Below, one piece after another: positions 39,356 to 62,795 of a stretch of DNA of 64,000 nucleotides; within the stretch, counting starts at the first letter, position 1, and each line of letters begins with the position of its first letter. Both the position numbers and the translations under genes were made by a program. The stretch lies in the IMG/VR virus record IMGVR_UViG_3300044797_000098, positions 186,001 to 250,000 of that record. The stretch is one strand, 5' to 3'. The notes under the pieces were generated by a model, which saw nothing but the letters and a program-made list of their open reading frames with translations, made no database searches and had not been told where the DNA came from.

Positions 39356-39679
39356 TTAGCCTGCAATGAAACGAACATAACGTGTTCGAGAATGATCTGT
39401 TGTGCGACCAAAACGAACGCTAACACCAGCATTACGAATTGATGGAACTATAACGTTTAGAACACGACGAAAATAACTTGGTGAACGAATGCCAGTGCGG
39501 ATTTTACCACTTAGATCTGTCATTGTTCCAATCCATTGACCATTTTTTGTCGAGTTAAGTAAATCAATTACTTGTTGTTTGATGTTGTTAACAACGGCGC
39601 GATCAACATTGATTGATCGTGTTGTTGTGCTGCTGCTTGTCTTGCGACCTGTTCGGGTTGTTTTTGCTGTTTTACTCAT
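39356..39679 (-). CDS. Small basic putative DNA-binding protein (winged-helix-like)
   Basis: K/R/T-rich N-tail; WIGTMTDL...SPSYFRRVLN...GVSVRFGR. Confidence 0.55.
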   Translation of the reverse strand: MSKTAKTTRTGRKTSSSTTTRSINVDRAVVNNIKQQVIDLLNSTKNGQWIGTMTDLSGKIRTGIRSPSYFRRVLNVIVPSIRNAGVSVRFGRTTDHSRTRYVRFIAG

Positions 39680-39738
39680 TTTGATTTCTCCTATTTTTAT
39701 TTTCTGTTTTTTGTTTGATTGTTTATTAAGGTAAGTTT

Positions 39739-40092
39739 TTACTTTGTTTGTTGTTTATGTCTATAAATTAGATTCTGAATATCAATTATTCGATTCCAAG
39801 GAATCTGAACCTCTACGAATTGTGATACATCTGTTTCTTTTATTCTTTCATTATACTCTGTTCTAACCGAATCAGATGGACAATAAAATCCTACGAACTT
39901 TGCACAATGAACGAAACTATCGTCATATTTTACTGCCAAAAAATATGGCATCTTTTGTTGTTTGGTAACTTCTAATGTTATTAGATATGTTGGAAGTGTT
40001 CGTTGTGGTGCTTTGTATGAATCTAAAATCGAAGGCTGACCCGGTGTTTCTTCAATTTGTCTATTTTTTTGTGGAACTAATATATCTGGCAT
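39739..40092 (-). CDS. Hypothetical protein
   Basis: 117-aa ORF abutting recA. Confidence 0.65.
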   Translation of the reverse strand: MPDILVPQKNRQIEETPGQPSILDSYKAPQRTLPTYLITLEVTKQQKMPYFLAVKYDDSFVHCAKFVGFYCPSDSVRTEYNERIKETDVSQFVEVQIPWNRIIDIQNLIYRHKQQTK

Positions 40093-61257: not shown

Positions 61258-61773
61258 TTATTTTCCGCAACATTTTTTAAATTTTTTACCACTACCACAT
61301 ATACATATATCATTCGGTCTAACTTTTTTAGGTTTTTCTTTCGGTAAAATAAAATCAGGCAATAGACGGTTATTCCAATGATCAATCTCATGTTGGGCAA
61401 CAACACCCATGAGACCCGTCAGTATCATTCCATGAGGATATACTAAATTATCTGAAATATGGACTTCATTATATCTGATCGTATCACCTACTAAATTAGG
61501 ATATGAAAGACATCCTTCTCCGATGAACTTAAATTGATCATATTTATTCTGTATTTTACAATTTACTAAATTGACTTTATGATTATTATCTATACGAATA
61601 ATAGCAACATTTTTATATATTCCGCATTGTATTGCGGATAGCCCTACACCCGGACGACCCATACGCCCAGAATACTCCAATTCACGTTCCAACTGCTCTA
61701 CAATGGCTCCTACTTCATTTTCAGGAACATCGGTGCAAGGCGTGCGTAAAACTGCTTCGTCTGTTATTATCAT
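61258..61773 (-). CDS. def: Peptide deformylase with C-terminal SEC-C zinc motif
   Basis: GVGLSAIQ, EGCLS, QHEIDH; tail RPNDICICGSGKKFKKCC. Confidence 0.93.
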   Translation of the reverse strand: MIITDEAVLRTPCTDVPENEVGAIVEQLERELEYSGRMGRPGVGLSAIQCGIYKNVAIIRIDNNHKVNLVNCKIQNKYDQFKFIGEGCLSYPNLVGDTIRYNEVHISDNLVYPHGMILTGLMGVVAQHEIDHWNNRLLPDFILPKEKPKKVRPNDICICGSGKKFKKCCGK

Positions 61774-61826: not shown

Positions 61827-62048
61827 TTATTTTCCGCCACCACAAGCACGGCAACCTTTTTTATACACATACTTATTATTAGCGTCCATAGGAAACGATA
61901 TACGCTTTAAACATATTGAACACATATTTTGTTCTTTTGAACAATTATCACATATACAAGAAAGATTATTAAGTATCTTACCTTGACAACGAAGACAAGT
62001 TCTCTGTGTTGCTAATACGGCGAGTTTGGAACATGATGGACAAAACAT
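61827..62048 (-). CDS. Cys-rich zinc-binding protein with CRIPT-like cysteine spacing
   Basis: Five CxxC pairs; core C-x2-C-x11-C-x2-C-x6-C-x2-C. Confidence 0.7.
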   Translation of the reverse strand: MFCPSCSKLAVLATQRTCLRCQGKILNNLSCICDNCSKEQNMCSICLKRISFPMDANNKYVYKKGCRACGGGK

Positions 62049-62062
62049 ATTATGACCTATAT

Positions 62063-62102
62063 AAAAAAAATAGGACGCAACATTTTACTATTGCGTCCTA
62101 TT
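62063..62102 (-). terminator. Strong intrinsic terminator after the 27-aa peptide gene
   Basis: 12-bp stem aataggacgcaa/ttgcgtcctatt followed by a T tract on the minus strand. Confidence 0.88.
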
Positions 62103-62117
62103 CACGTTATCGAGCAA

Positions 62118-62201
62118 TTACTTGCTTGATTTTTTTCCCTTTTTAGGGCTGCTTTTTGACTTTGTCTTTGTAGACTTTGTCGATTTACTTTTCTTTGCCA
62201 T
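62118..62201 (-). CDS. 27-aa Lys/Ser-rich peptide MAKKSKSTKSTKTKSKSSPKKGKKSSK (not in the ORF track)
   Basis: AAGGAGGTGATC immediately before the ATG; terminator 16 nt after the stop. Confidence 0.82.
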   Translation of the reverse strand: MAKKSKSTKSTKTKSKSSPKKGKKSSK

Positions 62202-62285
62202 GATCACCTCCTTCATGAGGGCTGTTATTAGCCATCAATTATACATTGATGGCATATTATTGGTTTATTAAGTTAAGTTTTTTCT

Positions 62286-62795
62286 TTATTTTGTAATATA
62301 TTTACTCCAAGTTTCATGCCAGCCATCTTCTACGGACATGTAATGCATATGCTCATTTGGTATGAATGGCTGTTTAATTAATTTCATTCCTGACTCTTCT
62401 AATGTTTTATTACTTTTCTTAGAATTACATTTTTTACAAGCAACAACACAATTTTCGAATGTTGATTGACCGCCTAATGCCTTTGGTAAAACATGATCTA
62501 TTGTCGCCTGTGTTGATTTTAAGGCTTTTCCACAATATTGACAATTATATTTATCTCTTTTTAATACATTAAGTCTCGAAAAAACTATTTTTTTAGAAAA
62601 CTTACGATACACATAATATTTTAATTTTATTACTGCCGGTAAGTGCATTACACCACTGCTAACAAAAAACTTGATATTATCCCATACTGATATAACATCC
62701 GCCTTACCTTTATATACTAATCTTAATGCTTTCTTTTCCTTTATGAAAGCAATAATTTCATCTGTATAATTTAGTAAAAGAGTTTTATTATGCAT
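62286..62795 (-). CDS. HNH endonuclease (McrA-like)
   Basis: RDKYNCQYCG, TIDHVLPKALGG, NCVVACKKCNSKK. Confidence 0.9.
   Translation of the reverse strand: MHNKTLLLNYTDEIIAFIKEKKALRLVYKGKADVISVWDNIKFFVSSGVMHLPAVIKLKYYVYRKFSKKIVFSRLNVLKRDKYNCQYCGKALKSTQATIDHVLPKALGGQSTFENCVVACKKCNSKKSNKTLEESGMKLIKQPFIPNEHMHYMSVEDGWHETWSKYITK

What the first reader, a model, noticed from the sequence alone, without database searches (positions are those of the whole stretch)
62063..62261. Hidden monocistronic gene for a 27-aa protamine/H1-like peptide with the strongest ribosome-binding site seen in the window
Seen: MAKKSKSTKSTKTKSKSSPKKGKKSSK has 12 Lys, no acidic residue and an SPKK motif. It is preceded by AAGGAGGTGATC, a 12-nt perfect complement of the conserved 16S 3' end, whereas other genes have short or no SD. 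It is followed by a 12-bp terminator and preceded by a hairpin (gccatcaa/ttgatggc, 62231-62253) overlapping an AATA-N6-CATC element. Established: SPKK repeats bind AT-rich minor grooves in histone H1, and tiny basic peptides also occur as ribosomal proteins. Inference: a highly expressed DNA-condensing or ribosome-binding peptide; alternatively the RNA itself could act as an anti-SD or 30S sponge.
Basis: partly seen in the sequence, partly recalled or inferred. Interest (0 to 1): 0.72.

Follow-up and report, generated by a model that had tools for sequence, protein, structure and literature searches.

The report
Unannotated polylysine micro-gene in jumbo phage
A 406-kb phage from peat carries a real, conserved but unannotated 27-codon gene for a very lysine-rich peptide, driven by the strongest ribosome-binding site in the genome; what the peptide does is still unknown.

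Summary
Window 62118-62201 (- strand) encodes MAKKSKSTKSTKTKSKSSPKKGKKSSK, preceded by AAGGAGGTGATC and followed by a 13-15 bp terminator.

**How exceptional the SD is.** The 12-mer occurs once in the 406-kb genome. Its predicted pairing with the 16S tail is -21 kcal/mol. The gene median is -4.4 and the next-best gene start is -14.7.

**Evidence that it is a gene.**
- The whole cassette recurs in four related peat-phage contigs.
- All indels are multiples of three.
- Serine codons switch families (AGC to TCA).
- The Lys-rich frame has the lowest pN/pS of six frames (0.42).
- The terminator shows a compensatory pair.

**What is not supported.**
- SPKK is not conserved (SAKK or SVKK in two variants).
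- No family matches the peptide.
- No RNA data could be found.
- The host is probably not Bacteroidota, because the phage has sigma70-type TTGACA-N17-TATATT promoters. The rpsU-like "SD-blind ribosome" reading is therefore weak.

**Context.** A 20-nt box occurs exactly twice per genome, upstream of this gene and of a small winged-helix DNA-binding protein in the replication module. A phage bS21 gene and a peptide deformylase gene lie nearby.

**Best reading.** It is an abundantly translated, disordered polycation that binds nucleic acid, most likely phage DNA. A ribosome-binding role remains a live rival.

The parts
62263..62282 (-). 20-nt conserved upstream box AAAAACTTAACTTAATAAAC, a promoter- or operator-like element. 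It starts 3 nt after the stop of the HNH gene.
   Evidence: It occurs exactly twice in G000. The second copy, with 1 mismatch, is at window 39721-39740. It also occurs twice in each of the two related phage records, at the same two genes. It is nearly invariant in 5 variants.
62231..62253 (-). 9-bp stem-loop GCCATCAAT/gtata/ATTGATGGC in the 5' leader. It is a likely 5' stabiliser of the transcript (inferred).
   Evidence: Conserved in all variants, with one C-G to U-G change.
62217..62222 (-). GCCCTC (GCCTTC in other variants). This short anti-SD-like element can pair with the GGAGG core of the SD (4-6 bp).
   Evidence: RNAalifold and RNAfold. It is weak and present in all variants; its function is inferred.
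62202..62213 (-). Extended Shine-Dalgarno sequence AAGGAGGTGATC, giving 12 consecutive pairs with the 16S rRNA 3' tail.
   Evidence: Unique 12-mer in the genome. Duplex energy -21.2 kcal/mol against a gene median of -4.4. Strongest site in each of three genomes. AAGGAGGTGAT is invariant in 5 variants.
62118..62201 (-). 27-codon ORF plus stop: MAKKSKSTKSTKTKSKSSPKKGKKSSK (net charge about +12, no hydrophobic core).
   Evidence: Conserved as 26-27 aa in 4 other contigs, with all indels multiples of 3. NG86 gives pS 0.50-0.77 and pN 0.07-0.25, like neighbouring genes. Lowest pN/pS of six frames.
62060..62103 (-). Intrinsic terminator: 13-15 bp G+C-containing stem, 6-nt loop, T8 run.
   Evidence: Folding energy about -20 kcal/mol. 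One G-C to A-U compensatory pair in two variants.
39356..39679 (-). 107-aa basic protein (P0001) with a winged-helix fold and a disordered Lys/Arg/Ser/Thr N-terminal tail. It is the only other gene preceded by the 20-nt box (box copy at 39721-39740).
   Evidence: It lies in a RecA / RuvC / DnaJ / primase module. AlphaFold2 pLDDT 81; Foldseek top hits are CtsR, MarR, TFE-alpha and RepE, all with weak E-values.
61827..62048 (-). 73-aa Cys-rich zinc-ribbon protein. Its start lies 12 nt after the terminator's T-run, so it is probably expressed by read-through.
   Evidence: Conserved in relatives.
61258..61773 (-). Peptide deformylase with a C-terminal SEC-C zinc motif. It gives a translation-related neighbourhood.
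   Evidence: Pfam PF01327 at 2e-21 and PF02810 at 4e-8.

Best explanation
This is a genuine, previously unannotated micro-gene of a 406-kb peat phage.

Anatomy. It is a self-contained cassette: a 20-nt upstream box, a 5' stem-loop, a 12-nt perfect Shine-Dalgarno sequence, a 27-codon A-rich unstructured ORF and a strong intrinsic terminator.

Expression (inferred). The cassette yields a short, stable transcript of about 190 nt. The extended SD captures 30S subunits far better than any other phage message. The tiny ORF is therefore translated at very high rate.

Product. The peptide has a net charge of about +12, is rich in Ser and Thr, and is intrinsically disordered.

Function (inferred). Its most likely job is electrostatic binding of nucleic acid. 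The primary candidate is neutralising or compacting phage DNA during replication and packaging of a very large genome. It would be expressed in step with a small winged-helix DNA-binding protein that carries the same upstream box.

Shown versus inferred. Shown: the gene, its conservation, selection at the protein level, the exceptional SD, the terminator and the shared box. Inferred: transcript ends, high expression, and the target of the peptide.
For: Gene reality:
- ORF, SD and terminator are in place.
- The cassette is conserved in four related contigs.
- Indels are all multiples of 3, and Ser AGC/TCA family switches occur in the invariant C-terminal KKSSK.
- pS is 0.50-0.77 against pN 0.07-0.25, as in the flanking HNH, Zn-ribbon, PDF and MTase genes.
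- The sense frame has the lowest pN/pS (0.42) of six frames.

Expression signals:
- The SD is unique and the strongest site in three genomes.
- Non-coding flanks are more conserved (72-95% identity) than synonymous sites.
- The whole transcript folds with z = -7.6, with a 5' hairpin, an open ORF and a terminator. The terminator shows covariation.

Link to DNA:
- The 20-nt box occurs only at this gene and at P0001, in all three phages.
- P0001 has a winged-helix fold and sits among RecA, RuvC, primase and DnaJ genes.
- Small polycations condense DNA. This is established for protamines, adenovirus Mu and baculovirus P6.9 (my knowledge).
Against: - There are no transcript, translation or virion data. 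No RNA run was listed.
- No homology to any DNA-condensing protein was found.
- SPKK is not conserved.
- Tailed phages are not known to package protamine-like peptides. They normally use polyamines and Mg2+ (my knowledge).
- The immediate neighbours, bS21 3.2 kb upstream and peptide deformylase 0.35 kb downstream, point to translation rather than DNA.
- The gene is restricted to a narrow clade. It is absent from the next-closest relatives, G003 (79% complete) and G004, so it is not a core packaging factor.
- Extended SDs can slow ribosome clearance, so 'strongest SD' need not mean highest output (my knowledge).
Confidence: 0.4

Rival explanations
1. Ribosome-directed microprotein. The peptide binds rRNA as a tiny accessory ribosomal protein, in the manner of bTHX, bS22 or bL37. 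It would form part of a phage translation-remodelling set together with the phage bS21 and the peptide deformylase.
For: - The phage encodes a bS21 homolog 3.2 kb upstream (PF01165, 9e-16, 127 aa with N- and C-terminal extensions).
- It also encodes a deformylase with a SEC-C motif 0.35 kb downstream.
- This gene order is conserved in three phages.
- The size and charge are those of known tiny ribosomal proteins (my knowledge).
- Ribosomal-protein genes typically carry strong SDs.
- Nitrospirales chromosomes hold an analogous 28-30 aa Lys-rich mini-gene with an extended SD, so such peptides also exist in cells.
Against: - No sequence match to any ribosomal protein family.
- The peptide has no aromatic or Arg residues, which are typical of rRNA-inserting peptides.
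- The shared box links the gene to a DNA-binding protein in the replication module, not to bS21 or PDF.
- Related phages that keep bS21 and PDF lack the peptide.
- Homology to the Nitrospirales peptide cannot be shown.
Confidence: 0.2
2. Sensor or client of a special ribosome population. The extended SD makes this message translatable only, or preferentially, by ribosomes with a free anti-SD. In Bacteroidota that means ribosomes lacking bS21, as for rpsU. Alternatively the clients would be ribosomes carrying the phage bS21. The message could also compete with host rpsU mRNA for them.
For: - The SD energy (-19 to -21 kcal/mol, 12 bp) falls exactly in the range reported as the signature of rpsU across Bacteroidota (-14 to -21 kcal/mol, 9-13 bp; PMC9976891).
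- As in Flavobacteriales genomes, exactly one gene per genome stands far outside the SD distribution.
- The phage encodes bS21.
- Most bS21-encoding myoviruses are predicted to infect Bacteroidota (PMC9723584; PMC9976891).
Against: - The phage carries about 30 intergenic cTTGACA-N17-TAtATT promoters on the coding strand and shows no enrichment of the Bacteroidota TAnnTTTG motif.
- Its genes show a modest but real short-SD signal.
- No T9SS domain was found.
- The phage bS21 is not close to F. johnsoniae bS21.
- Deformylase relatives are taxonomically scattered.
- So a Bacteroidota host is unlikely, and in an SD-using host a long SD is simply a strong ribosome-binding site.
Confidence: 0.1
3. 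RNA-level function. The transcript acts as an anti-SD (30S) sponge. Alternatively the ORF is a Lys-codon leader peptide that attenuates transcription into the downstream Zn-ribbon and deformylase genes.
For: - The SD, the 5' hairpin and the terminator are more conserved than the ORF at the nucleotide level.
- The Zn-ribbon gene starts 12 nt after the terminator's T-run, with no room for its own promoter.
- 12 of 27 codons are Lys, and the phage encodes a tRNA-Lys(UUU).
Against: - No antiterminator is available. The 5' arm of the terminator stays unpaired in the nascent RNA of the window and L004, and pairs only weakly in L003.
- A hairpin spanning the stop codon is not conserved.
- The amino-acid sequence, not the codons, is conserved at the C-terminus, and pN/pS is lowest in the Lys frame.
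- In one relative a 263-aa HNH gene is inserted between the terminator and the Zn-ribbon gene without disturbing the cassette.
Confidence: 0.1
4. The real product is the antisense (+ strand) Phe/Leu-rich 49-aa ORF (62122-62271), a small membrane peptide.
For: The antisense frame is open in all five variants, and its pN/pS (0.63) is below 1.
Against: - Openness is expected opposite AAA/AAG-rich sequence.
- Start codons differ between variants (TTG here, ATG in the 3' UTR of L003), and there is no SD.
- About 88% of the crude gene calls in the genome, and every ORF of 200 aa or more in the window, lie on the - strand.
- The SD, ATG, terminator and T-run are all oriented for the - strand.
- pN/pS is higher than in the sense frame.
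Confidence: 0.03

Closest known systems
Extended-SD translation initiation region of rpsU (bS21) in Bacteroidota (McNutt et al. 2023, PMC9976891; Naeem et al. 2026, PMC13000453)
   Same: There is a single gene per genome with 9-13 consecutive SD/anti-SD pairs and a pairing energy of -14 to -21 kcal/mol, far outside the genome's distribution. A bS21 gene is present in the same genome.
   Different: The gene behind the SD is a 27-aa polylysine peptide, not bS21. The phage's own bS21 has only AAGGAG, separated from the start codon by a hairpin. Promoter evidence argues that the host is not Bacteroidota, so SD-blind ribosomes are not shown.
Tiny basic ribosomal proteins (bTHX of Thermus, bS22 and bL37 of mycobacteria)
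   Same: They are 24-33 residues long, extremely basic, disordered on their own and missed by gene callers. Here, translation genes are neighbours.
   Different: There is no sequence similarity. The peptide is rich in Lys, Ser and Thr, with no Arg, Tyr or Trp. No ribosome association has been tested.
Viral DNA-condensing peptides (adenovirus Mu/pX, baculovirus P6.9, protamines) and histone H1 SPKK tails
   Same: They are short polycations, often rich in Ser and Thr. An SPKK motif is present in three of five variants here.
   Different: Those are Arg-rich proteins of eukaryotic viruses and are virion components. Here SPKK is not conserved, there are no virion data, and no such peptide is known in tailed phages.
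Nitrospirales 28-30 aa mini-gene found here (MAKVAKKKPAKKAAVRMKKASPKKKSSR and variants)
   Same: It has the same length, an MAK start, a Lys-rich body, a KK(S/T)S(K/R) end and an extended SD (-16.6 to -21.4 kcal/mol). It is monocistronic with a downstream hairpin.
   Different: It is chromosomal, in about 50% GC bacteria, and rich in Ala, Pro and Arg. Profile comparison shows no demonstrable homology. The first examples were found with a pattern that required the SD, MA and KKS, so part of the likeness is by construction.

Membership tests
Bacteroidota rpsU-type autoregulatory extended SD | SD/anti-SD pairing of at least 9 consecutive bp, at or below -13 kcal/mol, and an outlier in the genome | tested here: met
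   12 bp and -21.2 kcal/mol against a gene median of -4.4 and a next-best of -14.7. It is the strongest site in three genomes.
Bacteroidota rpsU-type autoregulatory extended SD | The regulated gene encodes bS21 | tested here: not met
   The ORF is a 27-aa Lys-rich peptide. The phage bS21 (G000 251372-251755) has AAGGAG plus a hairpin.
Bacteroidota rpsU-type autoregulatory extended SD | Host ribosomes sequester the anti-SD (Bacteroidota host) | tested here: inconclusive
   The host is unknown. Sigma70-type TTGACA-N17-TAtATT promoters, no TAnnTTTG enrichment and a modest SD signal argue against Bacteroidota.
Histone H1 / SPKK minor-groove-binding motif proteins | Conserved S/T-P-K/R-K/R motif(s) | tested here: not met
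   SPKK is present in G000, G001 and L264 but is SAKK in G002 and SVKK in L270. There is a single copy at most.
Tiny ribosomal proteins (bTHX and others) | Sequence match to the family model | tested here: not met
   No Pfam or NCBIfam hit even at E up to 10. There were no hits among 1.84 billion representatives.
Tiny ribosomal proteins (bTHX and others) | Stoichiometric presence in purified ribosomes | not testable with these tools
   Needs biochemistry or cryo-EM.
Leader-peptide transcription attenuator | Mutually exclusive antiterminator and terminator hairpins coupled to the leader ORF | tested here: not met
   The terminator 5' arm has no stable or conserved alternative partner in the nascent RNA of three variants: it stays unpaired in the window and L004 and pairs only weakly in L003. 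The consensus fold shows only the 5' hairpin and the terminator as conserved helices.
Protein-coding small ORF (general) | Frame conservation and purifying selection at the amino-acid level across relatives | tested here: met
   All indels are multiples of 3 in 5 variants. pN/pS is 0.42, the lowest of six frames. Pairwise, G000-G001 gives pS 0.63 against pN 0.07.
Virion-packaged DNA-condensing peptide | Presence in virions and late expression | not testable with these tools
   The phage is uncultivated and no RNA run was listed.

The most novel reading that the evidence does not exclude
The peptide is a phage-encoded accessory ribosomal microprotein, or its mRNA is the dedicated client of a special ribosome population. 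The 12-bp SD would select ribosomes whose anti-SD is freed or re-shaped by the phage's own extended bS21. Peptide, phage bS21 and phage deformylase would then form a ribosome-takeover module. Similar Lys-rich mini-genes with extended SDs in Nitrospirales would mark an unrecognised cellular counterpart.
Probability: 0.12. Interest if true: 0.85.

Novelty: new variant of a known kind. Interest (0 to 1): 0.55.

Why it matters
Gene callers skip ORFs this short. None of the five variants is present in a 15-billion-protein collection. Yet by every sequence criterion this is one of the most strongly signalled genes of a 406-kb phage.

If the peptide coats or compacts DNA, it would be the first protamine-like counter-ion described for a tailed phage. 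That bears on how jumbo genomes are packed.

If it binds ribosomes, or exploits ribosome heterogeneity together with the phage bS21, it would give a concrete handle on the open question of what phage-encoded bS21 is for.

The parallel Nitrospirales mini-gene suggests that 'extended SD plus polylysine micro-ORF' may be a wider class that has been overlooked.

Tried and rejected
- **Public phage records.** blastn of the region found nothing.
- **Rfam and tRNA scans of the window.** Nothing found.
- **Exact and degenerate DNA scans of IMG/VR.** Only the two related contigs carry the peptide. The other 40 hits to SD+ATGGC are unrelated genes.
- **Protein-level searches.** The 32-aa form gave no hit in 1.84 billion representatives. 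Exact look-ups were empty.
- **Host inference.** Deformylase relatives are scattered over many phyla. The phage bS21 is not specifically close to any solved bS21. There is no T9SS tail domain. I first leaned towards a Bacteroidota host because of bS21 and weak SD usage, and dropped that after finding sigma70-type promoters.
- **RNA evidence.** No RNA run was listed.
- **More distant relatives.** G003 and G004, fetched whole, have no Lys-rich micro-ORF with a strong SD. The syntenic spot in G003 is different.
- **Leader-peptide attenuation.** Rejected for lack of an antiterminator.
- **Homology of the phage and Nitrospirales peptides.** hhalign gave nothing.
- **Literature.** Searches for phage protamine-like or lysine-rich small proteins gave no precedent.

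Full report
**Setting.** The window is bases 186001-250000 of a 406,470-bp IMG/VR virus record (95% complete by CheckV, 35.6% G+C). About 88% of crude gene calls lie on the - strand. The DNA is held by peat-metagenome runs. No similar record exists among deposited phage genomes.

**The observation.** On the - strand the sequence reads ...GCCCTCATG AAGGAGGTGATC ATG GCA AAG AAA ... AGC AAG TAA. Sixteen bases later comes a 13-15 bp stem-loop and a T8 run.
- The ORF (62201-62118 including the stop) gives MAKKSKSTKSTKTKSKSSPKKGKKSSK. It has 12 Lys, 8 Ser, 3 Thr and no acidic or hydrophobic-core residues.
- AAGGAGGTGATC occurs once in the whole genome on either strand.
- Its predicted duplex with the 16S 3' tail is -21.2 kcal/mol. 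For 533 crude gene calls the median is -4.4 and the best is -14.7. Random positions have a median of -2.6.
- When every anti-SD-complementary site is scanned regardless of genes, this is still the strongest in the genome. The runners-up are Gly-Gly codon runs inside genes.
- Other genes show only a modest enrichment of AGGA, AAGGA and TAGGAG at -12 to -7.

**Is it a gene?** A deformylase-anchored search of IMG/VR found two related phage contigs, with deformylase 79-82% identical at the amino-acid level. Both carry the same cassette in the same gene order. The order is bS21, three unknown genes, an MT-A70 methylase, an HNH protein, the peptide, a Zn-ribbon protein and the deformylase. A metagenome pattern scan added two further variants.
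- In the five-way alignment, the SD core AAGGAGGTGAT, the ATG, the C-terminal KKG(S)KKSSK, the 5' hairpin, the terminator and an upstream 20-nt box are conserved.
- Every indel in the ORF is a multiple of three.
- The last Ser-Ser-Lys is encoded TCA-AGC-AAG in some variants and TCC-TCA-AAA in others.
- Nei-Gojobori counts give pS 0.50-0.77 and pN 0.07-0.25. This matches the four flanking genes, which have pS 0.32-0.67 and pN 0.05-0.21.
- Among all six frames the Lys frame has the lowest pN/pS (0.42). The open antisense frame gives 0.63 and the others 0.9-1.3.
- The non-coding parts of the cassette are more conserved (72-95% identity) than synonymous sites, so they are constrained too.
- The terminator shows a G-C to A-U compensatory change.
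- The upstream in-frame ATG of this genome is absent from the relatives, so the conserved product is the 26-27-mer.
- I conclude that this is a real protein-coding micro-gene. None of the variants is present in the 15-billion-protein collection, as expected for ORFs of 81-84 nt including the stop codon, which are too short for most gene callers (my knowledge).

**RNA anatomy.** The predicted transcript, from the hairpin to the T-run, folds far better than shuffles (z = -7.6). Its elements are as follows:
- a 9-bp 5' stem-loop;
- a weak 4-6 bp helix in which a conserved GCCYUC pairs with the GGAGG core;
- an essentially unstructured A-rich ORF;
- the terminator, at about -20 kcal/mol.

No stable or conserved alternative pairing competes with the terminator. 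Its 5' arm stays unpaired in the nascent RNA of the window and L004, and pairs only weakly in L003. Classical leader-peptide attenuation is therefore not supported. The next gene (Zn ribbon) starts 12 nt after the T-run, so it probably depends on read-through. In one relative a 263-aa HNH gene has been inserted there and leaves the cassette intact.

**A two-gene box.** The 20-mer AAAAACTTAACTTAATAAAC lies immediately upstream of the hairpin. It has exactly one other good match in the genome (19 of 20), 22.5 kb away. That match is upstream of a 107-aa basic protein, P0001, at window 39356-39679.
- Both copies are kept in both related phages, at the same two genes.
- A variant precedes a 60%-identical P0001 homolog in another contig.
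- P0001 lies among RecA-like, RuvC, DnaJ and primase genes and has 37 metagenomic homologs but no Pfam family.
- It is predicted with pLDDT 81 to be a winged-helix domain behind a disordered basic tail. Its nearest solved folds are CtsR, MarR, TFE-alpha and RepE, all with weak E-values.
- The peptide is therefore co-signalled with a DNA-binding protein of the replication module. P0001 might itself bind the box, which is untested.

**Translation context and host.** The phage encodes a bS21 homolog 3.2 kb upstream, just outside the window (127 aa; PF01165 at 9e-16). It also encodes a deformylase with a SEC-C tail 0.35 kb downstream.
- The literature shows that in Bacteroidota the anti-SD is sequestered by bS21, bS18 and bS6. 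A single gene, rpsU, carries an extended SD (-14 to -21 kcal/mol, 9-13 bp) that is read by bS21-less ribosomes (PMC9976891; PMC13000453).
- Many bS21 phages are predicted to infect Bacteroidota (PMC9723584).
- The present SD fits that signature numerically. That made an 'rpsU-mimic or bS21-sensor' reading attractive.
- However, the genome carries about 30 intergenic cTTGACA-N17-TAtATT promoters on the coding strand and no enrichment of the Bacteroidota TAnnTTTG motif.
- Its genes have a real, if modest, short-SD signal.
- No T9SS domain is present, and neither the deformylase nor the bS21 points to Bacteroidota.
- The host is therefore unknown but probably uses canonical sigma70 promoters and SD-dependent initiation. 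In that setting the 12-nt SD is simply an exceptionally strong 30S-capture site.
- The phage also encodes tRNA-Lys(UUU) and tRNA-Ile(UAU).

**Distribution.** The next-closest relatives have a deformylase about 52% identical. I fetched them whole: G003 (79% complete) and G004 (35% complete). Neither has a comparable micro-ORF, and the syntenic spot in G003 is different. The gene is thus confined to a narrow clade. That argues against a core structural role.

**An unexpected parallel.** The metagenome scan also hit six contigs of about 50% G+C with a 28-aa ORF, MAKVAKKKPAKKAAVRMKKASPKKKSSR, behind TTTTTAAGGAGGTGATCTC.
- The contigs are bacterial, encoding a histidine kinase, a FadL-type porin, a VOC protein and UvrC. 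By the names attached to near-identical VOC proteins they are Nitrospirota.
- Syntenic loci in two more distant Nitrospirales genomes carry 28- and 30-aa variants behind GGAAGGGGGGTGA (-16.6) and AAAGGGAGGTGAT (-18.9).
- This is a conserved cellular mini-gene with the same architecture.
- Profile comparison cannot show homology to the phage peptide. The first hits were selected by a pattern that demanded the SD, 'MA' and 'KKS'. I treat it as an analogue, not a relative.

**Interpretation.** What is shown is a conserved, selected, strongly signalled micro-gene for a disordered polycation.
- My best reading (about 0.4) is a highly expressed nucleic-acid-binding counter-ion. Most likely it acts on phage DNA, given the box shared with a winged-helix protein in the replication module and the physical chemistry of a +12 peptide.
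- The main rival (about 0.2) is a ribosome-bound microprotein working with the phage bS21 and deformylase.
- The specialised-ribosome or SD-sensor reading (about 0.1) depends on a host that the promoter evidence disfavours.
- RNA-only roles (about 0.1) conflict with the coding pattern of substitutions and with the missing antiterminator.
- The antisense ORF (about 0.03) lacks any signal.
- No expression data could be obtained.

**Verdict.** It matches no known family, so I rate it a new variant of a known kind, namely tiny basic peptides. Interest is moderate (0.55).

Noticed in passing
L272:293-376 (-), L267:1027-1110 (-), L262:6895-6978 (+), L276:6029-6112 (-), L277:3590-3679 (-): Nitrospirales chromosomes carry a conserved, mostly unannotated 28-30 aa Lys/Ala-rich mini-gene (MAKVAKKKPAKKAAVRMKKASPKKKSSR and variants). 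It has an extended SD (-16.6 to -21.4 kcal/mol), a TAGAAT -10 box and a downstream hairpin. It is syntenic between a GAF histidine kinase and shikimate dehydrogenase.
   Followed up: partly
G000 251372-251800 (- strand; = L002:1372-1800, just outside the window): The phage bS21 homolog (127 aa, with N- and C-terminal extensions) has a split ribosome-binding site. AAAGGAG is followed by a 6-bp hairpin (CGTGTG-caca-CACACG) and then TATGTGA-ATG. Folding of the hairpin would bring the SD to about 7 nt from the start. This is conserved in L003. In the more distant L005 and L006 the bS21 coding sequence itself contains AAAGGAGGTGACAC.
   Followed up: partly
window 39356-39740 (-): P0001 is a 107-aa winged-helix protein with a disordered basic tail. 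It is the only other gene with the 20-nt box and belongs to a family of at least 37 metagenomic proteins without a Pfam model. The family is syntenic with RecA, RuvC, DnaJ and primase genes in jumbo phages of up to 447 kb (L258).
   Followed up: partly
window 61258-61773 (-): The phage peptide deformylase is fused to a C-terminal SEC-C zinc motif (CxCGSGKKFKKCCG). This is conserved in four related phages and is an unusual combination for a ribosome-docking enzyme. The adjacent 73-aa protein is a multi-CxxC zinc ribbon ending in GCRACGGGK.
   Followed up: no
G000, mostly 372-406 kb and 1-30 kb (outside the window); one copy at about window 1828 (-): About 30 intergenic promoters of the form cTTGACA-N17-TA(t/c)ATT lie on the coding strand, with G+C-rich spacers. 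They are presumably early promoters read by the host sigma70, and they argue against a Bacteroidota host.
   Followed up: partly
G000 1488-1562 and 372830-372903 (outside the window): The phage encodes only two tRNAs, Lys(UUU) and Ile(UAU). This fits an A+T-rich phage in a host of higher G+C.
   Followed up: no
window 62286-62795 (-) and L004:2937-3728: The HNH protein just upstream of the cassette is conserved in all three phages (87-90% amino-acid identity), so it is not a recent mobile insertion. A different 263-aa HNH gene is inserted after the peptide's terminator in L004.
   Followed up: no
L266:6775 onward (+): A 35% G+C metagenome contig has a 41-aa basic ORF (MAVHHGGKVGRAGKTLSSKKSTRQQKTDASKTLNRHKAKYH) behind AAGGAGGTGATC. 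This is another small basic ORF with a perfect extended SD.
   Followed up: no
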